From Saccostrea cucullata (Eukaryota): a stretch of DNA of 64,000 nt. The position numbers were made by a program, and so were the translations under genes. Of the stretch, positions 1-40,803 are shown piece by piece; positions within the stretch are counted from its first letter, which is position 1; each line of letters opens with the position of its first letter. Below the pieces are notes generated by a model. It saw nothing but the letters and a program-made list of their open reading frames with translations. It ran no database searches and was not told where the DNA came from. The DNA is taken from NCBI RefSeq assembly GCF_032062105.1, contig NW_026928727.1:124001-188000 (forward strand), given 5' to 3'.

Positions 1-3000
1 CCTGTACAACAAAGAAGATTCATAACTTAATATTTACATTTCCAATAAATTTCCCCTACGATTCTTTACAAAATAAAATGCAGTTCATTTTCTCATGAAC
101 TACATTACATTTGTACCACGAATAAGCATGAATATCTCTATTTTTACGTCATAATACCACATTTGGCGTCAAAAATATAGTGCACACTGTTTTGCATTAA
201 AAATGGCAGTTGAATGGCGTAAATTTATGACAAGTCATCAGAAAAATATTGTAAATATAAGAAATGAATTTGATTTTTAAAGATTCATGAGGTATCTGAA
301 CTACAACGCTTCACGCCGGCATATTTATCATGAAGCGCTAATGCACTTCATGAAATATGCCAGCGTGAAGCCTCGTAGTTCATATCCTCATGAATCTTCA
401 AAAATTAAATACATTTCTTAAATGTACATACCTCATGTTCATTTTCTTTTGAATGAAAACTGACATCCATATCATTATGAGGAATGTAAAATATCTACAT
501 GTATTATGAACTTTCAGTCTTAAGTGAATAATTTTTGCATATTAAGCTTTATTCTAGTAATGTAAAATCAGTACTTTTGGTGGGGGGTTAATTTTCGTTG
601 TTTTCCAGGTATGGAGAGACCCACAAATTCATGACCACCACGAAATATAAAATTTGATATGCATTATTACTCAACACTTCTCCAACCACAAAATCAAGTC
701 CCCACATATCAATATTTTTTTCTCAAACCTCAAAAATCTGGCCTCACAATAATATATTATTGTACAGTGTTTTACTGGACCAGTGTTTTAAAAATAATTT
801 ATAAATATAATTCAAGCTTAAGTAAACTTCAAACCCACAAATCATGTACAGGTAATCAATTATGTTAAAACAACAAAATTTTGAAATATCATGCGTATTA
901 TTACTTACCTTGTCTAGATTGGCACAGGTGTGAAAATCCTGGGAGGACAGGTAATTAATGAGGGACTGTCCCTGTAGGGGTTGTTTAAATGTTCCCTCCC
1001 CTGGTATATCTGTAAATGAATAAGCAGTTTGATGTATAAAAAAGTGATGATCAAATAAAGCTAATTTAAACATCATTTCTTAGTAATATCAAACATTCTA
1101 TTGTAAGGATTACAATAATAACCTTTAAGATATTTGCAGTACAACATGAAATAGTAAGAGTATCTTTATAATTATATTTCCATATGCCAATGTCAATTGT
1201 CATACTTTTGTGTTGGTTGATTTATATAGTTTCTTTTATATTCATATATAGATAAAAATTTGTTTACCTTTATTCTCATATATTACTACTCCTTTTCCTT
1301 CTGCTGAAACCTTATTCTCCTTTTGTGTCATTTTCTCCACCTTGACCCCTCCTTGATCTGACCTTGACCTCTTATGCCCTTTTGATTTCACTTTGGCCTT
1401 CTCCTTTTCTTCTCCCTTTGGAGGGCATTCAGAGTCTGAGAAAATGTCTTCAAGTCTACTCACAGACGCCGGAGTTTCACGGCTAAAGTCCTCGTTATCT
1501 TTGTATATATTTTTAATCACAGCCGAGGTTTTGGAAATTCCCATATCTGACTGGCTCCTGACGATGACCTTTTTGGACTTATGATTGACCAGCTGTGGAG
1601 TGGACATCACTTCCTTTAAGGAGGGATCCCTATGGTTCATTTCATCACTAAATTCTATATTTAGCAGAGGATCACTATTTAGATTGTCATAGAAACTAAA
1701 ATCTGGAGCATCCCCTGTTGGAGACTCGGAACCAGATTTACGTAGAACTGTCCTTAAAGATTCCCGGGCCAAACTCTTGGTTTCTTCTGGACTTGTGCTT
1801 TCTCCTGTTATATAAAGCACAGACTTACAAATAAGAAAAACAATTTAGCCTTCAAAGCACAGACTTCCATACATAGAAAAAAATTTGCCAATATAAGTTT
1901 TGTCTTTGAGATCAATATTTTCAGTTTAGACAGTGCTAATATTACAAATGTAACATGTTACTCAATTTGAGCCTATAAACAAATACCATAATATTACATT
2001 AAAATCAATATTTATATAATACAGGTATTATTCAGTCATCATATGCTTGTACATCCTGTGTACTGATATATGAATTGATCTATACATATGAACATACCGC
2101 ACAGCTGCTGAGTATCAGGTGTTTTTAAATGACATAAGATAATAAGGGTAATATGTTGTTTATTACACTGAAGTGATATTTGACTGGGATAGAATTATGA
2201 ATAATACTCCTATAATTTTAGGATTCAAGATTACAAATAAAGGGATTAGAAGGCAAATACAAATATGTCATACTGTAGAAAATCTACATCATCTATTACG
2301 AATCAAACTACTCTAAATATTCTAAGTGAGAGTAATATTTTCATACTTATGGAGGAGGGAACAGCATGCTCATCAGACATGCATAAGATGCTCTCCTGTT
2401 TTGGAGATGCAAAAGGTGGTGCAAGTGCCATAGCATCATGGGAACTTGACTTCCTGTCACCAACTGAGTTACGATGCTTTCTTTCTGGTACAGCCCAGGA
2501 TCTACTTCTGGTTCCCTTGATATCATGGTGGTCGTGACTTAGCTAAAAATAGATAAATTAAAATAAAATGCTAAGACAAGGCTGGAGTAATAAAATCTAT
2601 AAATGATCATGAAATACATTTAACTGATAAAGTTATTCATGTACTGTTGATCTCTTTGTACTTTGCCTTTTTCTCTTCATGGGATCAAAATAAATACAAA
2701 TGTACACAAAAATAATACACATTTTAATAAAATTCATTATCTCTCTCTCTCTCTTCATTCTTAAAAATGTTGTCTTTGATTTGATTTCTCTCCACTTTAA
2801 AAAAATATTATAATTAAAATGCACATGATATACCGGTAAGTATACCTTGTGGGGTTATATTCGAAAGAAATGGCTATCTAGCTTGATAGTTTTATAAAGG
2901 AATAATATTTACTGGTCACAGTAAGAGTTATCTTTCATTGATCAGAGGGTCAATGAACCTAAAGTTGTCCATTTCCTAACAAAAGTTGGCCAATGTCATA

Positions 3001-6841: not shown

Positions 6842-9800
6842 ATGCCAGGATCTTTGATACTTTTATGCAGATTTCCAGCAAAGCGATCACTGGAAAGGTG
6901 AGAGTTTTTTACGGAGGACATGTATATCCTCTTTTAAATTTGTTCACACTTTCTCTTGCAATTCGAATTTCCTCAGTTTCTGTAACCTCTTATGCAATAT
7001 TGTGGTATAATGCTTTTTACACTTGTAGTGGAAATGAATTTGTGGACCAATCTCTTCATGCCATTAAAAACAAGAAATATTAAATTACCACCAAAATCGA
7101 TGAACGATCATGTGGATATAAAATTAAAACAGTTGCTATTGCTACTGGCATGAGAAAATTCAAGAATGATTTCTTTTGTCAGTTTTGATAAGTTTAGCTG
7201 AGGAATGGAAAAAAACATTTAAAAAAATTATTCGACCTTGAACATTGAATCAAATTTAAAAAAGATAATTGGCGTCAACTTCACTCATAAAATAATTTTC
7301 AATTCATACATTCTGTTATACATTTATGTAATGTGTGTAATTGAATGTTGTGTACAATGCATGCACTTATGAACTCTAAAAAGAATTTTTGAATAAATTA
7401 TTGCTATTTTTGTCTCTGAAGTAATTCAAGTTATTTGGTTGCAGCATTATATTGTAAATTCATGCTATATTTTATGTTTCAGTTTAACATCTTTATGCAA
7501 ACACAGTCATGTTTTCAACGAAGCTTGTCAAGGAAGACTTCTCCTGCCAAAGGGAAACAACTGTTCTTTTATGCACAAACAGTTTATCAGAGGGGCTCGG
7601 GGCACAAAACTCGGTCCACATCAACCTTTTGAGAGTGACAGTTCTCTTCTCATGAAGCATTTCCTATTAACAGTCACAGTAAGGCTTAATTAAAATTGTA
7701 AATTTAATGGCATATTCTACAGACAGACAATTAAAGAAGAAAGGAATAGATATGATCTTTCTTCAGTGTTCATATCATAAGCATGATAAGCAATGTTCAT
7801 TCTTTCCTATTTGTTTCTATTTAATCTAATGTTATTTGATATTTTTCAATTCCTGAATCAGTTGAGTTATCAAATTAAATTTATTATACAAGACTTGCTA
7901 GTTGCTGGTGCTATATATTATGACAGTAGGATATCATTAGTTCAGTTACATTTTCTCCTCTTTCTCCTCCTCTGTGAAAATTGTCTTCCTTTCATTACAT
8001 TAAAAAAAATTTTCATATCTTCTCATACATTTTATGTTAGGTATGTGGTTGCAGTTTCACAGGTGCCATGATTTGGGAGTATGAAAACATAAAGAAAAAA
8101 ATTCAAGCAATGAAGCAACAATTGTACTTCAGCCATGGAGCATTCAAAAATCACTACATAGAAGTTGTAAGTAGCAGTAAACGTAATTGATTGTGTATCA
8201 TTTAATTTTTTTTTTCATTATACAAGTTAGAAAGAGATTTACCAGTAACTTATGAAATCCAAGTAAATCTAAGTGTAATTTAACATGTTCTTTTTTCTTG
8301 CAAAAAGTAATCTTGTAATCTTATGTCAGTTTGAGGAAAGTCATTGAATCATTATTTAAATGAATTAAGTAATTAATATAATAAGTCATCTAAGACTGGA
8401 TTATTTTTTTTACTTGCAGACAAACCTAGTGAGTGGCATTGTTGTGATCAATGCTTTTGTTTATGTTTTATGGAAGATTCCCAGGATTTATCCCTTTATG
8501 CAGAGATATTTTTTATGCTCTCCTTGTAAAGGTATATATAAAGGAAAACATTGATGCTTACAGTATTTTCTCACCATTGTCAATAAATATTAAATGCTTG
8601 TACTTTAGTATAACAAATTACATTTTTACTGTTGTATGATGTCAAAAATTACAATTTTTAGCTCACCTCAACGAAGTTGGGGGGAGCTTATGTGATACCC
8701 TCGGCATCGGCGTTCCAGGTTAAGGTTAAGTTTTTTGGAGCAGTTTTCTTTTTAAGTACTTCTATGTCCTATATTGATTAGACATGCATGGAAGATGTTT
8801 CTAATGTGTTTCATTGTACCAGTCAAAGTTTCAGATGCTGCAATTTCAGCAAAGGAATGATCAGGTTAATGTTTTTGGTGCAGGTTAACATTTTTGGTGC
8901 AGTTTTTGTTGTAGGTCTCATTTCCGAGTAACTATAAGCCCTATGTTGACCAAACTTACGTGGATGGTACATCTTAGGATGCATACTACCAGACTTGCTT
9001 TGGATGCTGAATCTGACCTACATTTTCCGGTTGAGTGAACAGGTTAAAGTTTTTGGTGCAGGTTTCATTTCCAAGTTTCTATGAGACATATAATGACCAA
9101 ACTTGCATGGATGGTACATCTTAGGATGCATTCTACTAGACTTGCTTCGGATGCTGAATCTGACCTACATTTTCCGGTTGAGTGAACAGGTTAAAGTTTT
9201 TGGTGCAGGTTTCATTTCCAAGTTTCTATGAGCCCTATAATGACCAAACTTGCATGGATGGTACATCTTAGGATGCATACTACCAGACTTGCTTCGGATG
9301 CTGAATCTGACCTACATTTTCCGGTTGAGTGAACAGGTTAAAGTTTTTGGTGCAGGTTTCATTTCCAAGTTTCTATGAGACATATAATGACCAAACTTGC
9401 ATGGATGGTACATCTTAGGATGCATATTACAAGACTTGCTTCGGATGCTGAATCTGACCTACATTTTCCGGTTGAGTGAACAGGTTAAAATTTTTGGTGC
9501 AGGTTTCATTTCCAAGGTACTATGAACCCTATAATGACTAAACTTGCCTGGATGGTACATCTTAGGATGCATACTACCAGACTTGCTTCGGATGCTGAAT
9601 CTGACCTACATTTTCTGGATGAGTAAACAGGTTAAAGTTTATGGTGCAGGATTCATTTCCAAGTAACTTTGAGCCCTATAATGACCAAACTTGCATGGAT
9701 GGTACATCTAAGTGTGCATTCTACTAGGCTGGCTTCAGAAGCTGAATCTGCCTACATTTTCTGGATTAGTGAAAAGGTTAGTTTTTTATCCAGGTTTCAT

Positions 9801-12800
9801 TTCCAAGTAACTTTGAGCTCTATGTTGAACAAACTTGCATGGATGATACATCTGAGGATGCACACTAATGGACTTTCTTCAGATGTTGAATTCGACATAC
9901 ATTTTCCAGATAATAGACCTCGTAAAAGTTATGAGTGCAGGTCTATCACCAAGAAACTATAAGGCTTATATAAACCAAAGTTGCACAAATGATGCTTCAA
10001 GGGATGAAAACTCTCAATCTTGCTTCAGATGCTGGATTTTAATTACATTTTCATGATGAAGAACTAGCTTTAAGTTTTTATATAGGTCTATTCCAAAGTA
10101 TCAAAATTGCATAAATTTTTTATTTTTGGATGTACACTTTTTGTTGGTTAATTGTGTGACTTAATTTGCCTTACTTAAAGACAACATTCGTTGAGGTGAG
10201 CTCTGTAATCTCTGATTACCTATGTTTATAATTCAAATCAGACTTGCTATTTTCTCACGGTTGTCAATAAATATTAAATGTTTGTACTATTTCAGAACAG
10301 TCCGTCTTGGGGAGCTTTTTTGCGGCCTTCAGCCATGAGAACTTCCTCCACTTGTTCTGTAATATGTATGTCCTGTTGAGTTTTTCTACTGTCACTCTTA
10401 GCATGTTTGGAAAGGAACAGTTTCTAGGAGTTTATCTGAGTGGTGGTTAGTGTTCTATTTTTATATATATAAATACTGCAGTTTGTTAAAAGAGAGGAGC
10501 CCATCCTTTGACTACTAGTAATGAATATTGTTTCCATTTAAAGCATAAAAATATCAATTTTATCTATCTCTGTAGAACGTGATGACAATCACTTTCATAT
10601 GAAAAAAAAGAATTATTAATGTGGGAAATATTTGAAGCTAAATAATGACCATAAACCTTTATGATATTATAGGGGCATAAGTCTGTTAAAAAGACTCTCA
10701 ATAAGGATAATGTCCTTTAAATACTATACTTTGTCATGTTTATGTGTATAATTCTTAAAGGGCAGATCTGTAATACATGTAATTATAATGCCTCTTCTTT
10801 GTGGCTTTGTGGGTTTATGAGTGCCTGTTATTTGCCAGTGAGTTTTTTTCAGAGGAGAATTTTTCTATTACATTTACTAATCTAATTTGTTTTTTGTTTT
10901 TTTGTTCTTCTTGTAGCTGCTGTGTCGTCTTTTGTGAGCATGTGTAACAAGGTTGCCTGGAAGATTCCAACCCCTTCTGTAGGAGCGGTGAGCTGATACT
11001 AAATCTTTACTAGGATATCATATTTTCATTTTTAGAAAAGCATACTTTGTCTTGTAGATTCTATCAGATTTTTTAGTTATTAAATTTGCTTTAAATAAGT
11101 TCTTACAATCATAATTTGAAATATTCAAGTTCCAGATTGCATTATCGTTAAAGGTCTGTGCAGATTGTCTGCATTCTTTTATTGTGTTGTTTAATGGTAT
11201 TTTTCTGTATTTTAGTCAGGTGCAATATGTGCCTTGATTGGAGCCACCTGTCTTACCTACCCAGATAGTCAACTCAGTATAGCATTTATAGACCAGATTA
11301 TCCCACACTCATTTACAGCTCAGTCAGTGAGTATAAACATTAAATCTACCCAGATAGTCAACTCAGTATAGCATTTATAGACCAGATTATCCCACACTCA
11401 TTTACAGCTCAGTCAGTGAGTATAAACATTAAATCTACCAAAATATTCAGAACAGTATAGCGTTTATAGATCAGATTATCCCACAGTCATTTACAGCTCA
11501 GTCAGTGAGTATAAACATTAAATCTACACTGATAGTCAACTCAGTATAGCGTTTATAGACCAGATTATCCCACACTCATTTACAGCTCAGTCAGTGAGTA
11601 TAAACATTAAATCTACACTGATAGTCAACTCAGTATAGCGTTTATAGACCAGATTATCCCACACTCATTTACAGCTCAGTCAGTGAGTATAGACATTAAA
11701 TCTACACTGATAGTCAACTCAGTATAGCGTTTATAGACCAGATTATCCCTCACTCATTTACAGCTCAGTCAGTGAGTATAAACATTAAATCTACCAAAAT
11801 ATTCAGAACAGTATAGCGTTTATAGACCAGATTATCCCACACTCATTTACAGCTCAGTCAGTGAGTATAAACATTAAATCTACCAAAATATTCAGAACAG
11901 TATAGCGTTTATAGACCAGATTATCCCTCACTCATTTACAGCTCAGTCAGTGAGTATAGACATTAAATCTACCCAAGTCAACTCAGTATAGCGTTTATAG
12001 ACCAGATTATCCCACACTCATTTACAGCTCAGTCAGTGAGTATAGACAGTAAATCTACCCAGATAGTCAACTCAGTATAGCGTTTATAGACCAGATTATC
12101 TCACACTCATTTACAGCTCAGTCCGTGAGTATAGACATTACATCTACCCAGATAGTCAACTGAGTATAGCATTTATAGTATACACTTATCCACTGGTTGT
12201 GAGTGGGATAGCTCTTTTATCAAACCTGCGACAGGGAACTATTCCCCGAGGGCTTGCCCGGGAGGAATAGTCCCTGTCAAGGGTTTGATAAAAGAGCTAT
12301 CCCACTCACAAACAGTGGATAAGTGTTTTATTATACTGATGTATCATATAATTTCTGAGGTTTGAATTATTTGGGAGTAAGATAATACTGCAAGAATAAT
12401 CTGAAATCCTGATGATGTCACAATGCTACTGAAGTCATTATGACATCATCAGTCAATAGATTTATCGCTGAAAATCAAAATTGGAGGCAATAATTGCATG
12501 AAAATTTTCCGAGGGTGGATAGCAAAAACTATACCCCGCGGTATAGCTTTGCTATGCGTGAACTATAAAAGATAGCAATTTTACCTTCTGAACTTTATAT
12601 AGTATCAGGGGTTTAAAAATACGGTGGTCCGAGGTCCGGGACCTAAAGTTCTTGGGGGCGGACTAGCTAATCCTTACCTATCAATAGTCCGTCGGACCAG
12701 TACTTTTGAGAATGAAAAATATTATTTTAATAGGAATATTAGAAAAAAATAAACAACAACCAAAAAAAAAACCTCGTTCGTGTGTACTTTCGTTTTCTTT

Positions 12801-15800
12801 TAAAGCGTTCGGCTCACCTTGCCTGACTACAATATACGACAATGGCCGAGGTGTGCCGAGCGTTGTGAAAGCACTTAAGTCGCATCACTATAACGTTTTA
12901 TTGCTGCTCTTAAATAAAAACTAATTTCAAGCGTCAGTTCGATTGCATCAGTTTGACAGCGTGGTGGGAAAGGCGCCATGAGTAAAAAGGGCCAACAAAC
13001 ATTGTTTGATTTAAAGTTCGTCAGTTCAGCTGCTGAAAACGGTAAAAGGAAAAGTTCTGATGAAAATAAAGATCAAAAATATGACAAAAACAAGCGAAAA
13101 AGAACATTTCAAGAAGGTTGGAAAGAACGATATCCGTGGGTTGATCAGGATGATGATGGACTTATGTTTTGTAAGTACTGTCGCAGTTTCCCTGAATTTG
13201 CCAACAAATCGAGCGCCCTGTATAAAGGAACAACAAATCTAAAGATAGATCCTTTGATTTCACATGATAAGACGAATGAACATTTAACAGTTAGTAAACA
13301 TTATTTAACCAAAAAAAATCCCATTTCCAATGACCAGAACAACAACGAGGCAGTCGCAGAATATCGGAACAAACTATTACCCGTGATTAAAGACACGGAG
13401 ATAGGCAAAGCTTTTTATAAATTGTCTGAAGAGGAGAAGAAAAAAATGACAGTCCTTTTCAATACTGCGTATGCAGTTGCACGAAATGGAAAACCATTTT
13501 CAGATTATTTGTACATTTATGAATTGAACAGCTTGAATGGATTAGATATAAACGGTCAATATAACAATATAATTGCCTGTGAAAATTTTATTGAGGCTAT
13601 TTCACAGACTTTAAGAGAAAGAATTTGTGATGAAGTTCTGATGACAAACTGTGTCAGTATACTTGCTGATGGATCTACAGATGCCGCAATATTGGAACAA
13701 GAAATTGTCTATCTGCGGTCAGTACTATATAACAAAATTGTAATTTAATGCATAAGATGACATAATATTTGGTAAAGTGCATCAATATTTTGCATTTTTT
13801 TCAAATAATATGTTATTTTAAGAAAAGAAAAAGCATTTTGTGTTTTAGAAAAAAAATTAAATGACAAGTTAAATTTGATAAAGTCATATTTATTTGAATT
13901 TTCTTGTTTGATATTTAGGTATGTGCATCCAATTTCTGGGATACCAGTGTGTAGACAGATTGACATTATAGCAGTAAAATCGTCGGATGCCTCTGGAGTC
14001 TTGGGTGCACTGAATGCAGCAGTGGAAAATGGTTTAAATCTGAAAATGACCGATTTTCATCCTGATAACAAAGGAACTCCATCTCTCATCATGGCGAACT
14101 TTGACGGTGCTTCTGTAAACTTTGGATCAAAGTCTGGTGTTGTTGCACAAATGAAAAAAGACTTTACCAATATTTTGGCTCTGCAGTGTGTAGCTCATAA
14201 GTTAGAACTATCTATTTTAGATGCTGTTAAGTGTTGGAAGTATCTAAGTGACACATTTGAAGACATCATTAAGGGTATTTTCAAATTTTATCACTACTCC
14301 CCAAAAAGGAGGAGGGAACTTAGGGCAATTGCTGAGATATTAGAAAAAGAACTTATTCACTTTTCAAATGTAAAACAAGTCAGGTGGCTTGCTAGCAAGG
14401 CTAGGGCTATTGATGCTGTGAAAAAAAATTTTGAGCAAGTTGTAACACATTTAGAACATAATAATTTGTCTAGCACATATACAGAGGGTGCAAGTAAAGC
14501 CCTAGGGTATGTCAAAAAAATAACAACTGTCAAGTTTGTAAAAGTTTTGCATTTCATGCTAGACTTTTTACCTGTAGTTGCAAATCTGTCCAAATCATTT
14601 CAGTCTGAAACTGTGTTGTTGTGTGAAGTTACCATTTTAGTAGATGGGGCCATTTTAGCCCTGGAGGGTTTGAAAACAAGCAATGGGGCTAATATGAAAG
14701 AATTTTTAGAAAATTTTGACACTGTGACCTCAAAATATGGCAATGTAAAATTGACAAACAAACCACAAACACTCAATTACTCAGATGATGCTGATGTTAA
14801 AAAGTTTTTGTCTGATGTCATTACTTATTTAATGAAGAGGTTTGATGCATTGTACAAACCCCCATTTTCTTTGTTCAGTGTTTTTAATGTCAAGAACTGG
14901 CCAGTGCTAGTACCAGAACTAGGCAAGTATGGTGTTGATGAGATAATGTCAATTGTCAGTCATGAATGTTTTTCATTTTTATTCAATGAAGCTGAAAAGG
15001 CTGTTGTTCTTTCACAGTGGTCACTTTTGAAAGCAAAAGTTAGGCATCTTAGGCATGTATCATTAGTTGATATTTATTCCTCAGTTATTGCTGAGGACAG
15101 ACAATCAAAGCATCTCCCTGTCATATGTAAGGTGATTGAAGTTATGATGACACTTTCCCCTAGCACTGCCAGTTGTGAAAGAGGATTTTCAACCCAGAAC
15201 ATTGTAAAAACAAATAGACGGACAAAACTTACTCAGAACAATTTGCGAAATCAATTACTCTTGATGTTAGAAGGTCCTGATTTGAAAGATTTTAGGGCAG
15301 AAAAAAGCATAGCACAGTGGTTGCTCTCTGCTAATAAAAGTAGACATGTACATGGTCACAAACTGCATGAGAAAGACTCTGAATATGATGATGAAACAAA
15401 TATGTCTTATGATGCCTCAAAAGTTAATTAAAACTAAGCATTACAGTGTTTGTTTTGTTTTTTATTTGGACTAGTAATTTAGTGATGCGGACTAGTGAAT
15501 TTCACCAGCTTAATAGTCCTTGGACCAGTGGATTTTCAGGGAAAATTTAAACCCCTGTATAGGAAACATTTTAACAGAAGTATAATAAACCAGATTATCC
15601 CACACTCATTTACAGCTCAGTCAGTGAGTATAAACATTAAATCTACACTGATAGTCAACTCAGTATAGCATTTATAGACCAGATTATCCCACACTCATTT
15701 ACAGCTCAGTCAGTGAGTATAAACATTAAATCTACACTGATAGTCAACTCAGTATAGCGTTTATAGACCAGATTATCCCACATTCATTTACAGCTCAGTC

Positions 15801-18800
15801 AGTGAGTATAGACATTAAATTTACCAGATAGTCAACTCAGTAGAGCGTTTATAGACCAGATTATCTCACACTCATTTACAGCTCAGTCAGTGAGTATAAA
15901 CATTAAATCTACACTGATAGTCAACTCAGTATAGCATTTATAGTCCAGATTATCCCACACTCATTTACAGCTCAGTCAGTGAGTATATAGACATTAAATC
16001 TACATTGATAGTCAACTCAGTATAGCGTTTATAGACCAGATTATCCCACACTCATTTACAGCTCAGTCAGTGAGTACAGACATTAAATCTACCAGATAGT
16101 CAACTCAGAAGAGCGTTTATAGACCAGATTATCTCACACTCATTTACAACTCAGTCAGTGAGTATAGACATTAAATCTACACTGATAGTCAACTCAGTAT
16201 AGCATTTATAGTCCAGATTATCCCACACTCATTTACAGCTCAGTCAGTGAGTATAGACATTAAATCTACACTGATAGTCAACTCAGTATAGCGTTTATAG
16301 ACCAGATTATCCCACACTCATTTACAGCTCAGTCAGTGAGTATAAACATTAAATCTACACTGAAAGTCACCTCAGTATAGCATTTATAGACCAGATTTTC
16401 TCGCATAATCACCAGTGTTAGATTGACTTGTCCGTTGTGAGACAGCAGAGTGAGATTTTTCTGTCTCACACTGTGAATTACTACGCCGCGAACGATAACG
16501 TAAACATTTCGTCTTTATATAAAGAATTTGTAATAATGTTAAAAAATATTACATATGCTTAAAAGCTTGTCATTTAATTTATTAAGATAAACTTTTTCAT
16601 TCAAAATATTGTCGTATTTTCACTTTTTGAAAGGCACTATTTTTTGATCACGGAAATTCATTCTTCTGAATGAAAGTTTACGGTATCGTATAGATAAGTT
16701 TTTTTTATTCCTAGTTTTTATCTATCTAATTAATTTACATGGACCAAAATTCATTTTATTAGTTTACACTACGTCAGTACGTGTAAACCATTTTCAGGTA
16801 CGTTCTATCCGATGGTGCATTTAGTTTTTTAATTAGATGGAAAATTAAAAGAACTTTCATTTTTATATTTTTAGCCCTATCATGGCGACATCATTGACAG
16901 GCCGTTATTTTGGAAATAATGCGAGAAAAATAATCATTCATTACATACTCGTGTGGGAATAGTGAAATTCCACCTCGGGGCCAAGATTCACGGTCTAGGA
17001 CTCGGCAAAGCCTCGTTCTAGACCGTGAATCTTAGTATCCCCTCGGTGGAATTTCACTATCCCACACTCATAGTAATGAATGATTCTATTAATCCCACAC
17101 TCATTTACAGCTCAGTCAGTGAGTATAAAAATTAAATCTACCTAGATAGTCAACTCAGTATAGCATTTATAGACCAGATTATACCACACTCATTTACAGC
17201 TCAATCAGTGAGTATAAACATTAAATTCTGTTGAAAATTATATCAAACACTTCATTCCTTTAAATTCTTGTTTGTACATGATAAGTTTTGCTTGGTGGAT
17301 TTAGAAGTGAATCATTTCTAGCTGTATCATTGTTGTACAAGTCATAAAATAATATCAGCTGTATGACACACAGACATATTACATGTACAATTACACTGTA
17401 ATTCATATTTTTTTCAAGGATTTTTAAAATGCCTCTAAGAAAAGCTGTTCTATACCTGTACTACACATTCTTTGCTCTCAATTAAACATACTTCATATAC
17501 AAAGTCATTTAAGTTCACCCTCCAATCAAAAATTCATATAATATTCAAATGCTTCTCTATTCTGATTCCCCATGAATACCAGGCTAATGTTATCAGGCGC
17601 GTAGCCAGGCGTACGTTTGTACGCACAAACGTCCACATCATTTTCCAAAGAAAAAAAAAGAAAAGAAAAGAAAAGAAAGAAAGAAAGAAAGGAGAGGAAA
17701 GCCATAAAAAATGAAAATCAATAGAATCAGTTTTATGGGAAAATACGATATTACATGCACCACTGAAATCAAAAGATTTTCCCGGATTTAGGTTTACTAT
17801 CGAATATTGCTGATTTTTTCCAAGTGTAATTACATTCTTCATTGGAGTTTCTCTATTGTAGATGTCACACAATAAAACCCCGCCCTGTCGATTCCCTTAA
17901 ACAGATTTATGCCAAAAAATTCAATTTCTATTAATCGAAATTAACTTTCAACCGCAATACTTAACTTCTGTAACGATAACCCCCCCCCCCCCCCCATTTT
18001 AACTAATATCGGATTCATGCAAGACTTCAAAGTTCAGAAATTTAAAATTGGTAAAATTTAGTTAAACCTTAAAAATAATAACCTGTTTAAGTACTGACAG
18101 TGTGCAACAAAATGCGTTTTAAAAGGATTCTTCTGTCTTTGTTATTTTCAATCTTTAGAGATGCATTTTTAATATTAATGTTAGCCTGACTATCAGTCAA
18201 TTACGTGGTCTGTCTAAACCAGTCAACCACTCTAACCAACTACTATATGTTACCATACGTATTTTGTCGAGCTTCAAAACTCTAAAATTGTTTTAGTGGA
18301 TTCACTTTTGCATGGACAGATCTTTTCTCATTTTTGAGTGACTGTCCGCAAGAACAGACCTTAAGTATGTGGCTGCGTAACAAACTGAAAAGGTGTAAGA
18401 AAATGCAAACAGAAGGGTCAAACATGCACATCGAAGTCGTCGTAAATTCATCAGCCTCCGGAGGCTTCGCCCCCTAGGCTCCCACCAGGACTTTGCCCTG
18501 GACTCATTGGGGACCTTAAATCCCCAGCCTATCCAGGCATCCACATCAAATGTACCCTGCCTACGCCCCTGGTTATACAGTACTGTAGATTCCTAATTAT
18601 ACGCGAGGAATTAATTTCCGCGTAATTTCACGAGAAGCATCGCTTGCGAAAAAATATTACTCACTTTTATTTTTATGGTGCTGAAGTCTATGTAAATTCT
18701 GTTGATCAACCGTTCATTCGTGAATTATAATTCTCGCGGTTTAACGTTAAAGACCCAGTTCGTGATTAAAAGTACTCACTGAAAATGTATTTTTATTTTA

Positions 18801-19097
18801 TTCCTACCCCCAGGGTTTACTAGGACTGATAACCTTTGACACCTTGGGAGTTATCTTTAGATGGAGGTTTTTTGATCATGCTGCACATTTAGGTGGAACC
18901 TTATTTGGCATGTAGGTATTTTTCTTTAATTGTACATGTACGTACCTTTCAATTCTATTTTTGGTGTTTTTACATGAATACTGAAATCAAGACTTTTGTC
19001 TTTCAGATGGTATATGAAATATGGACAGGATCTCATCTGGAAAAAGAGGGAAGCTGTGATTAAATGGTGGCATAACATGAGGAAGCCTTCAAAATGA
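6842..19097 (+). CDS. PARL: Presenilin-associated rhomboid-like protease, mitochondrial; exons 6842-6897, 7483-7678, 8041-8166, 8420-8531, 10296-10445, 10917-10987, 11216-11326, 18814-18911, 19007-19097
   Basis: Spliced protein contains GAMIWEYE, FSHENFLHLFCNMYVL, GKEQFLGVYLSG, catalytic SVGA|SGA and FFDHAAHLGG, and a C-terminus WYMKYGQDLIWKKRE..WW. All junctions are GT-AG and in phase. AATAAA at 19114-19119. Confidence 0.95.
8655..10227 (+). mobile_element. Helentron-associated (HINE/DINE-1-like) non-autonomous element carrying a 147-bp tandem array
   Basis: T-rich start with agctcacctcaacgaa and its inverted copy ttcgttgaggtgagct near the 3' end, followed by a small hairpin (gtaatc-tct-gattac). 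The internal unit recurs at 9021, 9168, 9315 and 9462 (period 147 bp), about 8 copies with degenerate edges. Confidence 0.8.
12606..15557 (+). mobile_element. Autonomous-looking hAT DNA transposon (2952 bp)
   Basis: TIRs caggggtttaaa / tttaaacccctg. Imperfect 8-bp TSD tatagtat / tataggaa. Subterminal ggacta/ggacca repeats at both ends. Encodes a transposase. Confidence 0.92.
12978..15431 (+). CDS. hAT transposase (ZNF862-like type), 2 exons 12978-13717 and 13919-15431, 750 aa
   Basis: N-terminal TTF-type Zn finger (FQEGWKERYPW...MFCKYC...H..TNEH), catalytic D (LADGSTD), D (NFDGAS), CxxH (QCVAH), RW, and E in the hATC dimerisation motif SPSTASCERGFS. One in-phase GT-AG intron and no stops. 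Confidence 0.92.
16398..17090. mobile_element. Split-hairpin (Crypton-like) non-autonomous element B, with its hairpin at the opposite end from A
   Basis: Palindrome at about 16930-17090. The complement of the outer arm atgcgagaaaa is found at the element start (ttttctcgcat). Inserted at accagatt | aatcccacac of the host repeat. Confidence 0.65.
17594..18571. mobile_element. Non-autonomous TIR element with 5-bp TSD
   Basis: TIRs caggcgcgtagccagg / cctgcctacgcccctg. TSD gttat at 17589-17593 and 18572-18576. Confidence 0.8.
18581..18780. mobile_element. Truncated TA-target (Tc1/mariner-type) MITE, same family as 55151-55368 in inverted orientation
   Basis: Begins tactgtagattcctaattatacgcgaggaattaatt, similar to the reverse complement of the right end of the 55151-55368 copy. 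Confidence 0.65.
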
Positions 19098-19830: not shown

Positions 19831-20094
19831 CCAGGAGTATCGTTTTGTTTGAACTCAATGCTCAAAGCATCTTTAGTTTCGTCAATGATTTGGAAACATT
19901 CGCCACTGAACTAAGTGTATAGAATGTAAAAATTATTTGCCACTTTTTTTGCGACAAAAAGAAGCATTTATATGATTTTGTTTTTTGAGGAATACTTATG
20001 TATTTTAATCCTAGGACAAGAGCAATCAAACACAGGCACCTGTGCAATCAAACTGATAAGAATATAGATCATCAGAGTATATTGGTGTCTTAAT

Positions 20095-21225
20095 ATGGTA
20101 ACAAGTAACATGTTTTATGTTCTTTTTGGTTTCCTTAATGCAATATGTGTTTTGGGACACCAAGGATTCGAAATTCACTCGGCAGATGTTGAAGGGGAAA
20201 AGTTGTGTTCCGATGAGAACGTTTTTCACATTCAGCAAGAACAAATTGACTTTCTTATGAGAAAAGTTTCTGAACTCTCAGCTGGTTTTCAACAACAGAA
20301 GACGGAAATAATTCAACTGAAAAACGAAAATCAAAATCTGATTCGTGCTTTGTCGGACATTGAGAAAATGTTTCAAAGTAGTCGACGCAAAGATGGCCAT
20401 TCAAAGTTAAAGTATGAAAACGGATTTAAAAAGAGTTCATTGCAACATGTGCAGGAAGATGGAGAGTCGGCAAAAGCTACAGAAAGGAAGGGTATCTCCA
20501 AAATCAGAAAAGGTATCGTTTATATTGACATTTTATTCAAACATAGGCGTTGAACCGAGGGTGGGTGGTTAGCTCTCCCCCTCCCAATATTTTGCAAAGA
20601 TAAACATTGTAAAGGCATTGAAAATTGCAATTGGGTCCTACTCCTCCCCTATCGATACTATTTTCTTGTATAAAATCAAATAAATTTAATTTCACTGAAT
20701 TTCAAAGTTGTTGATGGTCTTCAATGAATGGTACGCTGCAATCATGTTTGAAAGAAACTGGGTTTTTTTTTCACAGAAAGGCTATTATTACCACTTCCTA
20801 CAACCCGATCACCTCCTGCAAGTAAAGACGTCATAGCTTTTTATGCGTATATGACGGGTGACAGCATTGATCCTGGTGCCTCGCGCACTCTCATCTTTGA
20901 TAAAATAATCACCAATGCTGGAAACGGGTATCACAATGCCACTGGAGCTTTCATCGCGCCCCGAACTGGCATTTATGTTTTCTCATGGTCCATGCGTTTA
21001 GTTAACAGCGCTTATCACCAAGCGGAACTGGTGCACAACCACAACGTTATGGGCGTGGCATATCTCTACGCCCCCACCGGAGACCACACGGTCAGCGGTA
21101 CGGTAGTCATTCACGTTAACCAAGGGGATGACGTTTTCATCAGAACACAATCCGGGGCCAATTCTGGGAACATCGAAAGTGGGCCTGGTGGACGTACATC
21201 TTTCTCCGGGTGGAAACTAAGTTGA
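20095..21225 (+). CDS. Secreted C1q-domain-containing protein (C1qDC) copy 1; exons 20095-20512, 20777-21225
   Basis: Signal peptide, coiled coil (QQEQIDFLMRKVSEL...), then gC1q: IAFYAY..LIFDKIITNAGNGY..TGAFIAPRTGIYVFSW..VVIHVNQGDDVFI..TSFSGW. Phase-1 GT-AG intron. Confidence 0.92.
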
Positions 21226-21518
21226 ATTAAAAATTGACAACAACGATAATTTGCCGACTTTGATTGATTTATTCGATTTGAAAGAAACTATCTAATGTAT
21301 TTATATCTTTGTAAGCATTTGGCATTGATGTTAATGATGTATCTTCTTCGTCTACTCATTTTATATTGATCATGTTTCGGTATATTGTATTTTCAAGTGC
21401 ATATTGGCAACACCCATCAGCCACGCAATTCTAAATTTCTAGAACCCATATAGTAAACATTTAAAGACTGCGAAACAGTGAAAAAATGGTAGATGGAACA
21501 TTTCCAAGTTTATCAACA

Positions 21519-22081: not shown

Positions 22082-23362
22082 TTACAATCTGTTTTGAAGT
22101 GAAGATTACACAATATTTTATTATGCATTATTATATCATTGTTTCGTTAATGATATTTGTCAAAGAATAGAATTGTGGATAAACCGAGGCTTAGGTTTAA
22201 AAAAAACTGCAGTTCATGTGGTTAGTTTTACGAAAACTAGGATATTTACAAGACCCAGGATTATGAAATAGATCATTTTAATTTAATACTTGTTAAATGA
22301 AACTCTTAAGGACAGATTATACAAACAAAAAATGGATGTCTGGACTGTTATATATTTTTTGACCCAATTTCATTGCAAATGATGCAAATAATAAATTTCT
22401 AGAATATAAAGAAATTGTAAACCTTCTTTGATGTTCGAAATTCTACCCTTCTGAAACTATCCTTATTATTCTATACAAACAAATATTTTCACTTCAAATT
22501 CCGTTTTTGTGCAATTTTGAATAAAAAAAATTAAAAACTACGCGGTGAGACGTATTCATTTCATTCATTAAAACATGACCCAAATTGTTATTCTCAAAAT
22601 TGTTGACAAAAGTTTGTTTGTCTGTCCTTAATTTGCACATAACAGCAGTTCGATAATGATGCATTTTTAAATTGGAACGCACTATCATCATTTTGGACTC
22701 CTTAACTTCTAAAGTACCACATACAAGTATATTTTGACTTAAAGATGCTTCATGATCTCGGGGGCCAGTATAGATAAGGGATATTCTGCTACCTTTGATA
22801 TTTTGCGATTAATTTTCTTTTTTTTTTCTACATTGCGGCATTCTGCTTTCTTAAAAATTGCAATCTTTATATAAATAAACAAAAATAACATACAAAAATT
22901 ATACAAAAAAAATAAAAGAAAGAAAGACAAAAAAGGAAGAAGAAAGTAACATGGACCTATCAATTTATGCTCCCTCAATATAGTGATTAGTGCAGTCATT
23001 AAGTATTTTACATCAAATAAAATAAAACTCTTATATAGCAACGTTCTATATTGCTGAAGAAGAAAACGACTCCTTTAATTTTAGCAAAATAATAAGCTAA
23101 AGGAAATTACAGTATTTTGAAATGGGAGCCAGGAGTATCGTTTTAGCTGTGAGCTAATCTCTAGTTTCGTCAATAATTCTGAAACATTCGCACTTACTGT
23201 ACAGAATGTAAAAATTATAAGCCACTTTTTTGCGAAAAAAGATCAATTCATATATTTTTCTTGAGGAAGACCTTTGTATTTTAATCTTACGGACTAGAGC
23301 AATCAAACTGATAAGAATATATAGATCATCAGAATATATTGTTAATCGGTCGGTGTCTTAAT

Positions 23363-24402
23363 ATGGAAACTAGTAGCATGATATGTGTTCTTTTTGGTTT
23401 CCTTAATGCGATTTGTGTTTTGGGAAACCCAGGATTGGAAACCCACTCGGCAGATGTTGAATGGAAAAAGTTATATTCCGATGAGAACATTTTTCACATT
23501 CAGCAAGAACAAATTGACTTTCTTATGAGAAAAGTGTCTGAACTCTCAGCTGATTTTCAACAACAGAAGACGGAAATAATTCAACTGAAAAACGAAAATA
23601 AAAATCTGATTGGTGCTTTGTCGGAAATTGAGAAAATATTTCAAAATAGTCGACGCAAGGACGGCCATTCAAAGTTAAAATATGAAAACGGATTTAAGAA
23701 GAGTTCATTGCAACAAGTGGAAGAAGACGAAGAGTCGACAAAAGCTACAGAAAGGAAAGGTATCTCCAAAATCAGAAAAGGTATTGTTAGTATTGAAATA
23801 TTACTCAAACATAGGCGTCGGAACTGAGGGCCCCCACCACATGTGCAAACACTTTTTTTTCAAAGATAGACATAATTAAGGCACTGAAAAAAATTGCATT
23901 TGCCCCTCCCTCTCCTTCCCTATTGATATGTTACATTATTTTTTTCTCTACAGAAAGGCTATTGCTACCACCTCATACCACCAAAGCCTCTCCTGCAAGT
24001 AAAGACGTGATAGCCTTTTATGCGTATATGACGGGTGACAGCATTGAACCTGGTGCCTCGCGTACTCTCATCTTTGATAAAATAATCACCAATGCTGGAA
24101 ACGGATATCGCAATACCACTGGAGCTTTCATCGCGCCCCGAACTGGATTTTATGTTTTTTCATGGTCCATGCGTTTATTCAACGGTTCTTACCACCGAGC
24201 GGAACTGGTGCACAACCACAAAGTTATGGGCGTGGCCTATCTCTACGCCCCCACCGGAGACCACACGGTTAGTCATACGGTAGTCATTCACGTTAACCAA
24301 GGGGATGACGTTTTCATCAGGACACAATCCGGGGCAAATTCTGGGAACATAGAAAGCGGGCCTGGTGGACGTACATCTTTCTCCGGGTGGAAACTAAGTT
24401 AG
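23363..24402 (+). CDS. Secreted C1qDC copy 2 (tandem paralog); exons 23363-23780, 23954-24402
   Basis: Same exon structure and high similarity to copy 1. The upstream region from atgggagccaggagtatcgtttt is also duplicated (about 19824 and 23122). Confidence 0.92.
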
Positions 24403-24844
24403 ATGTTATTGACCACAATATGACTTCATGTGCAAAATTTACATAAACTTCTTTTAAAAGAAGCGAAAGTTTTGGTTGTCAAATATCAGAATACGAGAAA
24501 TCAATAAATGACGAAGAATATTAATTATTCTGCTTTCTAATTTTTTTAACAACTTTGTACGCGTTGTCCAAATCAGTAAAAATCAATTACATGTAGTTAT
24601 CGACCACACGTGATGCATGGATGTTTATGGTAATATTTTTTTTCTACAAGCTTAAACCACAAGATAAAAGTGTAAATATCGACAGATCCCCCTCTTTAAC
24701 AGAAATCATCACCGTCCGTGTTGTCTGAAACATGTGCTGGTCACATATAAATCTCTATGTCCAAACAGAAAATGACGTCATGATCGAACAAACATCAGTT
24801 CAAGAGAGAAGGTGAGATTTCTAGTTTTTTTTTTTTTAAAGAGA

Positions 24845-27800: not shown

Positions 27801-30800
27801 TAATCAATTTCAACTTTCTTTTTCCCGTACTTTACGGCTTTAGCAGAATTATGTAAAAAAAAAAATGGGGTATTTTCATGTCATTCAATTTGAATTCATA
27901 TGAAAAGTAAACCGGATACCTATATTAAATTTGATATTGATTTAAAGAAGAGGCCATGAACATATTAATTACCGTTTTCGGAGTGACTGTAGGCAATCTG
28001 GATACATTTCCTTTGCCGAATACAAAAAAACTCCCATATTCATGACTGGTTTTCTAAATTTTTCATTGAAAATGACAGTTTAAAATACAGTTTTTCATCT
28101 TGTTTACCTATAAATTATGCCCCGAAACACCTTATTTGACCAAGCTAAAGTTGTAAAGCATCAATAAAGGAATATAGTTCTCAAGTTTGATAAATCTGTA
28201 GGCACCTTTCATTTACTAGATCTTGACCTTAATGAGACTTTCTCTTTGTTACGTAGTGCCATTGTGCACCTCCAATTTTACTTTTTGATCAGACACACAT
28301 TTTGAGTTTCCTAGAGCAAAACATGAACACGACTATTCTTTCTGTAATTTTGAGGGGTACCCATCTCTTATCCACAACTTCTCCTTTACAACTGAATAAA
28401 TTTTAATGATACGTTCACAGATTCCTTATTACATAATCCCATTGTGCACTTCTCATTTTACTTTTTGATCTGACACCTATTTCGGGTCTTCCAGAGCAAA
28501 ACATGGACTTACCATTATAACTACGAGGCAGGGATATCATTTAGTGAGCTCATCACTCGCAGTACCGCTAGTTGTATTTTACTCAATACAATCAATCACA
28601 CAAAAATCTTTCTTCATATAAAATGGTTAATAAGTTAAATATGGAACTAACACAACTATTTATTTATTATAGAACATATTTGTTATTGTGCGATTTGTTT
28701 GATAAAGACACAGAAGGTTTCAAATCATCTTGTTGATGTATTTTTTTTATACCAAGCATTCCAAATACGCTACTATTTCAGTAAATCAGTCTATTTGTGC
28801 TGTACATTCTTAAATATATCTCTTATCCACAACTCTTCCTTTACCTTTGAATAAAATTTCATGATAATTTCAGAGATTCTTACATAATGCCAGTGTGCAT
28901 CTGCTATTTTACTTTTTGATCTGACACTTTTTTCGAGTCTACCAGAGCAAAAAATGGACCAATTATAATCATATGGGAGACTGAGGGTAGCATTTAGGGA
29001 GCTCATCACTCACATTACTTGCCGAACCTTTTTAATAGGGTTGACATTTACATGATCAATTGAATAAAAAAAGTTATGAGCTATGAAATATCATAAAAGT
29101 GACAATTTTTTTTAAAAATAATTGTATGTTGTATTCACTACTGACCTGTGATCTACAACAGACGCCCAGCTGGCTTGTTTAATCCCCCACGTTCTAAACA
29201 GCACCAAAACAGATGAGAACGCATCACACGCCGACCTAAAAGACAAAATCAACTGTCTAAATCCACTGAGTAGTAAGAGGGCTTATCTTATGTCATACTG
29301 TTTCATTAGTTACATTTTTAATAACTGCATTTACTGAGTATCTTATAATGTGTACGACTTGAAAAAAAAAAACCTTAACTTTTGAAATATCAAACAATTA
29401 GTTCTCGCCACTTTTTTCGTATGGTGGAAGTTTATTTATGTTAATCATATTCTTTGGCTAAAACCGTAACCTGTAGTTTGTGGTATATTTTCAAACTATT
29501 CTTTTATAATTAGGTATATTCCAGCCCCCTTACCCTCCTGTCGTAGATGATCCACTGACCACCTATGGGTGTCTTCATCTAAATGGTAAGCTATCTACAA
29601 CGTGGAAAAGGTTTGTACTATCAAAATAATACTTTAAAACAAAGACCTCAATTAAACAAAACACAGATAAAAAGGGTATTAATAATTTAAGAAATTAATG
29701 ATATAGATCTTTGATTTTTTTGTGTTGTAGACCATTAACTTAGAGAAGGTGTTCTGCTATGTATGCAAAGCTTCCAAAATACATTTGAGCAGAATTAAAC
29801 TTAAAAAAAAAATCAATACTTAAATAACATGCTAGAACATTTAAGCAAAGTTTCTATTAAAAAAATAATCTCTGTATTTTACCGATGTCATTAGTTTCTC
29901 TTTGTTCACATATTACCGGTAATTTGGAATATTTTAGTTCAGTAGTATAAATTTTAATTCAAAATTTGAAGAACTAAGCTTTTCTCTTTTGTTATCATTT
30001 AACTTTCGCAGCTAAAAACATTGTCATGTTATTTTATATAAAATCGATATGACAAATAACTGATCAATTGCAGATTCTCCCAAAGTCGAGTTTCAGTGTT
30101 TTATGGACCACATGAAAAACAAAGAACCATTAGAATCGGCGAATTGTACAACACCACCACTTCCAATAAATAAAACAACCCTGGGTAGATACAATTGTAC
30201 AAATATCACAGGTGGGATTCTAAAAGAAATATTAAATTAAATAAAAAGATGACAATATTTTACATTTCTGAAAAAAGAGAACAGTTTTTGAAGGATTTGA
30301 TCAAAGTTTATTGAAATTTAGTATGAAATCGTTTTTATAAATAAAGGGTCTTTTTTCAGCATAAGATTTTTTTTTTAATTTGATCGAAAATAGTTTCAGA
30401 TTCAAATCTAATGTCCATAGTAATAAGTTGAATACTATTTCCAAAAGTGAACCTTAGAGAACATAGTACATTTTGATTATACAAGATTGATCCAAAAGCA
30501 ACATCACTTTTGAATCAACCTTCATAAAATCCTAAATTACAAAAAAGGTTAAAAACTCGTATTACGGAATATAATTAAGGTACTCCGATCTTCAGTCAGG
30601 AAGGATAACTCTTTAATCTATAATTTAACATAATTAAGATGAATGTACACATTTTCCACTGATATCTTACTTGTGTATCTTTCAGATATCGTGCATGCTA
30701 TTAATCTGTATTATGACGCGAAGGATGTGTTTGGAGGAATAAATATATCCGCCATTCCTCCCCTGCCGACACCCCCGGTCATCACGACCCAGACAACGAC

Positions 30801-40074: not shown

Positions 40075-40803
40075 TTTTTATGCGCCAGGATCGAAAGATC
40101 CGAGGCGTATATTGTTTTTGTCCTGTCTGTCTGTTTGTCTGCAAACTTTAACCTTCGCCATAACTTTTGAACCATGAATGATAGAGACTTCATATTTGGT
40201 ATGCCTACTCCACTAATGAAGCTCTTTCAAATGACACCAAGGTCAATGACCTTGTGACCTTGACTGTGACCTATATGCTAAAAATAGAGGTTTTTTTGCA
40301 AACTTTAACCTTTGCCATAACTTTTGAACTATAAAAGATAGAGACTTCATATTTGGTATACATACAACACTTATTAAGCTTTTTTAAAAGACACCATGGT
40401 CAATGACCTTGTGACTTGACTGTGGCCTATACGCTAAATATAGCTTTTTTGACGGCAAACTTTAACCTTCGCCATAACTTTTGAACGAAGAAAGATAGAG
40501 ACTTCATATTTAACATGCATACTCCACTAATGAAGCCCTTTCACATGACACCAAGGTCAACGACCTTGTGACCTTGACTGTGTCTTATATGCTAAAAATA
40601 GCTTTTTTGAACCTTCACCATAACTTTTGAACCATGAAAGATAGAGACTTGATATTTGGTATGCATACTTCACTAATCAAGCTCTTTCAAATGACACCAA
40701 GATCAATGACCTTGTGACCTTCAATGTGACCTTTATGCTAAAAATATCTTTTTTAAAATTTGTTGCCACCGGGCACATAGTGTTTCACAAACACATCTTG
40801 TTT
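40075..40803 (+). mobile_element. Helentron-type element with a 157-bp tandem array
   Basis: 5' hairpin ggatcgaaagatcc and (ctgt)n microsatellite. Unit start aaactttaacc at 40143, 40300 and 40457. 3' end gtgtttcacaaacacatcttgttt. Confidence 0.8.

What the first reader, a model, noticed from the sequence alone, without database searches (positions are those of the whole stretch)
11257..17226. PARL intron 7 is an array of the gene's own exon end and acts as a repeated landing pad for split-hairpin (Crypton-like) elements
Seen: about 21 copies of an 89-bp unit whose first copy is PARL coding sequence. Two different hairpin elements, with hairpins at opposite ends, sit only about 8 bp apart in unit coordinates (atttatag|accagatt and accagatt|atcccac). 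Their own arms resemble that site. A has cacttatccac and ctatcccactca. B has ctatcccacactcat, sharing the 14 nt tatcccacactcat with the host unit, and its end ttttctcgca aligns with host ttatcccaca. Each element's outer palindrome arm is split between its two ends and would be restored by circularisation. Established: tyrosine-recombinase transposons (Crypton) are thought to move through circles and recombine at short sites similar to their ends, without ordinary TIR/TSD. Inference: the PARL exon contains a natural att-like site. Amplifying it in the intron created about 20 harmless decoy targets that absorb insertions which would otherwise break the exon carrying the catalytic serine.
Basis: partly seen in the sequence, partly recalled or inferred. 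Interest (0 to 1): 0.8.

Follow-up and report, generated by a model that had tools for sequence, protein, structure and literature searches.

The report
Crypton insertions in exon-edge minisatellite
The end of an exon of an oyster-like PARL protease gene has been copied 21 times into the next intron, and two common hairpin transposons landed there because each copy holds a short target motif that also occurs at 100,000s of other places; it is an ordinary accident, not a protective decoy.

Summary
The anatomy is real: 21 copies of an 89-bp exon-end/splice-donor unit interrupted by two hairpin elements, A and B, inserted without target duplication 8 nt apart in unit coordinates. A and B are abundant non-autonomous families (912 and 286 candidates), here in opposite orientations. 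B ends lie beside DUF3504 (CryptonA recombinase) hits elsewhere (coordinates only). Both have real but short target motifs: A ATAD|N7-TAT (256/481 genome-wide), B WT|DTCYC (38/110). The PARL unit scores well for both, but equally good sites number about 0.3-1.4 million, and other copies sit in unrelated flanks. Twenty decoys would cut the exon's risk by under 0.01%. A second, probably allelic, contig has 4 units and no insertion; exon and array share variants within each haplotype. The array is a known 'mirage' minisatellite. The decoy reading is not supported. What remains of interest is mechanism: both families' circle junctions pair with an internal arm leaving a 2-nt excess, which fits a folded single-strand recombination site. 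The scan noted this hairpin architecture and exon-edge arrays before on other DNA of this genome.

The parts
10297..10446 (+). PARL-like rhomboid exon (HxxxN helix)
   Evidence: Pfam Rhomboid E 2.1e-8; boundaries read from sequence
10918..10988 (+). 71-nt exon ending in G-A of the GASG motif
   Evidence: joined to 11216 in RNA-type contigs
11216..11326 (+). Exon starting with the catalytic Ser codon; last 70 nt are part of unit 1
11288..11301 (+). Target site in the exon copy: ATA G|ACCAGAT TAT for A (cut after 11291); B cut after 11299
   Evidence: array units give the empty site; PWM scores 10.0 of 11.0 (A) and 7.3 of 8.9 (B)
11257..12178 (+). 89-bp exon-end/donor array, units 1 to 11 (part)
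12179..12605 (+). Element A, 5' part, with 145-nt terminal hairpin 12182-12326 and inner mirror arm to about 12342
12606..15557 (+). Nested hAT transposon: 12-bp TIR, degenerate 8-bp TSD (12598-12605 / 15558-15565, 6 of 8), transposase in two open frames (12978-13748, about 13920-15431) probably split by an intron
   Evidence: empty A junction seen in other copies and in run X1
15558..15588 (+). Element A, 3' end, carrying the split half of the outer arm
15589..16397 (+). 89-bp array, units 11 (rest) to 20 (part)
16398..17091 (-). Element B, 694 bp, same architecture as A in opposite orientation; hairpin about 16912-17091
17092..17226 (+). Rest of unit 20 and terminal unit 21
18814..18911 (+). 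Next PARL exon with catalytic His motif HLGG

Best explanation
Two independent, ordinary processes met. (1) The exon end plus donor was duplicated head to tail and changes length by unequal exchange or slippage (a 'mirage' minisatellite); splicing uses the first donor. Shown: structure, 21 versus 4 units, first-donor splicing. Inferred: the mutational mechanism. (2) A and B are non-autonomous Crypton-type elements with hundreds of copies that insert without duplication at short motifs resembling their own 3' end (A: ATAD then 7 nt then TAT; B: WT then DTCYC). Shown: logos and genome-wide counts. Inferred: tyrosine-recombinase catalysis through a circle. The unit happens to contain a good site for each family, so the array is a somewhat richer target than average DNA (about 9-fold per base for A, 1.3-fold for B), and intronic hits are tolerated while a hit in the exon copy would be purged. 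No selection for decoys is needed. A hAT element inserted into A separately.
For: A 912 and B 286 candidates. Unrelated flanks in 26 A and 17 B independent copies. Motif counts 256/481 against 18 expected and 38/110 against under 1 expected. Sites as good as PARL's: 13 (A) and 67 (B) in 58 kb of the same window. At least 2112 exact copies of the B-type hairpin apex genome-wide, control 8, and 3-8 similar long hairpins in 214 kb of sampled DNA. Contig C439 has 4 units and no insertion. Mirages are described as length-unstable and neutral for splicing (PMC3087553; PMC1557585). B ends lie 1.1-1.2 kb from same-strand DUF3504 hits on C14853 and C11811, each about 1% likely by chance.
Against: Two hits in 1.9 kb is still uncommon: P of at least two is 0.03-12% depending on density and weighting, acceptable only because many arrays and families exist. 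The unit scores in the top quarter (A) and above 16 of 17 (B) natural sites, and shares 12 nt with B's arm (3% by chance), so some added attraction cannot be excluded. Autonomous partners were not read. C439 being allelic rather than paralogous is inferred from 30 kb of collinearity at 82-95% identity.
Confidence: 0.8

Rival explanations
1. Selected decoy: the array was amplified or kept because it absorbs insertions that would hit the catalytic exon.
For: The exon holds the best A site among six PARL exons scored and a strong B site; two insertions lie in intronic copies and none in the exon.
Against: Twenty extra sites among 0.3-1.4 million lower the hazard by 0.001-0.008%. The exon is spared by chance 91% of the time. 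C439 has only 3 intronic copies. Exon and array exchange variants, including a Thr/Ser change shared by the C439 exon and its units 2-3, so the array is if anything a source of change for the exon.
Confidence: 0.03
2. Neutral hotspot: the unit mimics a longer protein-binding arm of these elements (TATCCCACACTC), so the array is a true insertion hotspot beyond the short motif, without benefit to the host.
For: 12-nt family-level identity next to the B site (p about 0.03); A and B share a CTATCCCAC 9-mer; two hits in 1.9 kb.
Against: No other copy shows extended likeness (identity to the PARL site 4-13 of 22); TATCC not enriched at A sites; the motif match was chosen after the fact; no insertion in C439.
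Confidence: 0.13
3. A and B are moved by a non-YR enzyme, such as an HUH/Y1 single-strand transposase (IS200/IS605- or Helentron-like), which also uses subterminal hairpins, short one-sided targets and no TSD.
For: Terminal hairpin, no TSD, target resembling the element's own end; no partner found for A.
Against: A's target is a two-sided palindrome (ATA-N8-TAT), typical of a dimeric recombinase; B ends are linked to DUF3504 hits twice; A and B share apex and layout.
Confidence: 0.07
4. The 21-unit length or the insertions are an assembly artefact.
For: Short-read contigs of run X1 cover the array only to about 11549; no long-read check.
Against: Units differ by 7.9% on average with shared variant blocks; junctions follow the family rules exactly; C439 confirms the array type.
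Confidence: 0.04

Closest known systems
Mirage minisatellites (amphioxus Adh3, globins; PMC3087553) and human F7 IVS7 VNTR (PMC1557585)
   Same: Tandem copies spanning an exon-intron boundary, each with a donor; copy number differs between haplotypes; concerted evolution; first donor used.
   Different: 89-bp unit in a bivalve rhomboid gene; interrupted by transposons; exon copy shares variants with the array.
Non-autonomous animal Cryptons (CryptonA, DUF3504; PMC3212892, PMC13465315)
   Same: No TIR or TSD; short microhomology to target; non-autonomous copies far outnumber autonomous ones; B ends near DUF3504 hits.
   Different: The 2011 paper found no terminal repeats in animal Cryptons. Here there is a terminal hairpin with an internal mirror of the joined ends and a defined target logo, which I did not find described in the papers searched.
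CryptonV (target-specific, microsatellites; cited in PMC8869645)
   Same: YR transposon with target preference, found in tandem DNA.
   Different: A and B are not confined to repeats: 2 of 43 sites lie in tandem arrays.
DIRS internal complementary region; integron attC and CTX-phi folded single-strand sites (the latter two from my own knowledge)
   Same: Internal sequence complementary to the joined ends; folded site with unpaired bases beside the crossover.
   Different: No reverse transcriptase or ITRs here; single-strand intermediate not shown.

Membership tests
Crypton (CryptonA) | Autonomous member encodes a tyrosine recombinase (DUF3504) between the same ends | tested here: inconclusive
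   Coordinates only: B left ends 1.16 kb upstream of DUF3504 hits on C14853 (a 4204-bp tandem, one event), a B right end 1.1 kb downstream of one on C11811. Not read. None for A.
Crypton (CryptonA) | No TIRs and no target site duplication | tested here: met
   Array units give the empty site; nothing is duplicated or lost; ends invariant over 26 A and 17 B copies.
Crypton (CryptonA) | Short microhomology between element end and target | tested here: met
   Host ATAD mirrors A's 3' ATAA; host DTCYC mirrors B's TTCTC.
Crypton (CryptonA) | Circular intermediate | not testable with these tools
   Only the folding of a joined junction was computed.
CryptonV (microsatellite-targeting) | Specific insertion into tandem repeats | tested here: not met
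   2 of 43 reconstructed sites lie within tandem repeats.
Mirage minisatellite | Unit spans an exon-intron boundary and is repeated head to tail | tested here: met
Mirage minisatellite | Length differs between haplotypes; homogenised within a cluster | tested here: met
   21 versus 4 units; haplotype-specific variants shared by exon and units. Allelism inferred.
Mirage minisatellite | Normal splicing at the authentic site | tested here: met
   Contigs of runs X2 and X7 join 11326 to the next exon; these runs are other individuals or relatives whose array length is unknown.
hAT transposon (nested) | Short TIRs, 8-bp TSD, transposase with C-terminal dimerisation domain | tested here: met
   12-bp TIR, TSD 6 of 8, PF05699 E 0.002 (below cut-off) and zf-C17orf113 E 3e-8.
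DIRS/Ngaro retrotransposon | Inverted or split direct terminal repeats, reverse transcriptase | tested here: not met
   No such terminal repeats or coding sequence in A or B.

The most novel reading that the evidence does not exclude
These animal Cryptons integrate from a folded single-stranded circle. The joined ends pair with the internal mirror arm, the junction strand is 2 nt longer than the arm beside the crossover in both families, and one strand exchange with a double-stranded target is resolved by replication, as at integron attC or CTX-phi. This would explain why A's donor spacer (9 nt) and target spacer (8 nt) differ and why each product keeps its own spacer.
Probability: 0.3. Interest if true: 0.7.

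Novelty: new member of a known kind. Interest (0 to 1): 0.3.

Why it matters
As a locus it matters little: a known repeat type hit by common transposons. Its use is technical. The array supplies 19 empty copies of the target, so it fixes the element ends to the base and yields target logos for two animal Crypton-type families, whose ends are reported as hard to define. Those ends make the folded-substrate model testable. If that model held it would be a eukaryotic counterpart of integron-style recombination.

Tried and rejected
Unit search in the genome: only this locus and C439. Rfam: no match. PDB searches of single exons: nothing useful. A-end patterns in metagenome and viral contigs gave only short chance matches, no autonomous partner. 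PF00589 hits (97 scored of 1184) are not near listed A or B ends. An automatic test for split arms in other hairpins of the sample was inconclusive, so the density estimate rests on apex and size only. Rejected: significance of the 8-nt spacing (19% by chance, and the two motifs overlap in one AT-rich stretch); the 14-nt match as a family feature; TTATCC as part of the A target.

Full report
Observation. Tandem Repeats Finder reports 89-bp arrays at 11257-12178 and 15585-16397, and an anchor search adds two more copies after 17092. Cutting out the two insertions leaves 1866 bp, exactly 21 units, 7.9% apart on average. Unit 1 is the last 70 nt of an exon plus 19 nt of intron including the GT donor. 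The exon, 11216-11326, begins with the Ser of a G-A-S-G motif split by the preceding intron. The exon two upstream hits Pfam Rhomboid at E 2e-8 and the one downstream at E 0.019. Contigs of public runs join 11216 to the upstream exon and 11326 to the next exon, so the first donor is used. The name PARL rests on motif similarity recalled from memory; the numbering as intron 7 fits the exons traced. Exons were searched separately and not joined.

The insertions. Because 19 units are empty, ends can be read exactly. A runs 12179-15588 and B 16398-17091, with no base duplicated or lost. Most of A here is a nested hAT transposon, 12606-15557, with a 12-bp TIR, an 8-bp TSD matching at 6 positions and a transposase with weak Pfam support. 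Other A copies are about 450 bp and lack it. A has 912 and B 286 first-look candidates in the 1.17-Gb assembly. Each has one long terminal hairpin whose inner arm continues into the mirror image of the far end. They share a hairpin apex of the form CGAGG(G)C-TT(T)-GCC(C)GAG, and oriented by it they have the same layout, so the opposite hairpin positions are opposite insertion orientations. An exact B-type apex pattern occurs 2112 times in the genome against 8 for its control.

Target preference. In 26 independent A copies the host reads ATA, one base other than C, the cut, seven free bases, then TAT. Genome-wide 256 of 481 exact A ends have TAT at that place against 18 expected. In 17 independent B copies the host reads WT, the cut, then DTCYC; 38 of 110 exact ends carry ADTCYC against under 1 expected. 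In both, the host flank imitates the element's own end. The PARL unit scores 10.0 of 11.0 bits for A and 7.3 of 8.9 for B. But 13 and 67 sites as good lie in the other 58 kb of this window, about 0.26 and 1.4 million in the genome. Beyond the motif the other sites do not resemble the unit (4-13 of 22 identical), and only 2 of 43 lie in tandem repeats. TATCC is not selected by A (11 of 256, 7 expected). The 14-nt match of B to the unit owes two bases to a change private to this copy; the family-level 12 nt is reached by 3% of random windows.

The decoy idea. Twenty further sites change the exon's share of targets by less than 0.01%, and two random hits among 21 equal units miss the exon copy 91% of the time. 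Contig C439 is collinear over 30 kb and has 4 units with no insertion. Its exon and units 2-3 share a variant that changes Thr to Ser and is absent from all 21 units here, so exon and array are homogenised within a haplotype, which exposes the exon rather than shielding it. Two hits in 1.9 kb have a probability of 0.03-12% under densities of one element per 27-71 kb and weights of 1-9. That density is rough and comes from a sample biased to transposon flanks. With many arrays and families, such cases are expected. B sits in the penultimate unit and is 8% from its nearest relative, so it may predate the expansion; this is inference.

What moves them. The genome has at least 151 DUF3504 and 97 phage-integrase matches. 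Two B left ends on C14853, 4204 bp apart, each lie 1.16 kb upstream of a same-strand DUF3504 hit, and a B right end on C11811 lies 1.1 kb downstream of another; each link is about 1% likely by chance. Three B copies have both ends about 3.78 kb apart (C296, C4524, C17080). DUF3504 marks CryptonA recombinases, and Cryptons are described as lacking TSDs and showing microhomology to their sites (PMC13465315; PMC3212892). No partner was found for A.

Mechanism. Shown: exact ends, no duplication, target logos, pairing of the joined ends with an inner arm. Inferred: a circle, recombinase catalysis. In both families the junction strand is 2 nt longer than the inner arm next to the crossover (A 9 versus 7 between ATA and TAT; B 7 versus 5). 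A's targets have 8, so donor and target spacers cannot be homologous, and each product keeps its own spacer. This fits one strand exchange from a folded single strand resolved by replication, as I recall for integron attC and CTX-phi, but a duplex circle with mismatch repair is not excluded.

Known kinds. The array meets the description of mirage minisatellites (PMC3087553) and of the F7 intron 7 repeat, where the first donor wins (PMC1557585). A and B work like non-autonomous Cryptons; membership is likely for B but unproven, and microsatellite-specific CryptonV (PMC8869645) is not met. Earlier notes of this scan report exon-edge arrays as common in this genome and the hairpin-mirror architecture in recombinase-coding elements; I used them as leads and checked only the cited papers and this locus.

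Verdict. Observation confirmed, Crypton-like nature supported, landing-pad and decoy function not supported. Interest 0.3.

Noticed in passing
window 11257-11326 versus C439 exon: Coding exon and intronic units share haplotype-specific variants (one Thr/Ser change), suggesting conversion or re-duplication between array and exon.
   Followed up: partly
window 12606-15557: Apparently intact hAT transposon (zf-C17orf113 plus dimerisation domain), at near single-copy depth and about 99% identical in run X1; possibly a low-copy active family.
   Followed up: partly
G000 C14853 336275-341982: Tandem pair (period 4204 bp) of B left end plus DUF3504 hit; could be a head-to-tail Crypton dimer preserving a circle junction.
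   Followed up: no
window 19900-21350 and 23250-24450: Two tandem C1q-domain-like genes (judged by eye from translations) inside or just after the PARL locus, also duplicated in C439.
   Followed up: no
window 250-428: Another 180-nt hairpin, sharing its apex with one in the L026 flank; probably a further family of hairpin elements.
   Followed up: partly
window 8901-9907, 40134-40754, 52440-53058: 147-164-bp tandem arrays typical of bivalve Helentron-like central repeats (from my own knowledge).
   Followed up: no
G000 C1168 and C14538: A second locus (in two copies) where an A and a B element lie within about 7 kb, so co-occurrence is not unique to PARL.
   Followed up: partly
window about 29000-36600: Open frames resembling an adhesion GPCR gene (GPS and 7TM-like stretches, by eye).
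   Followed up: no
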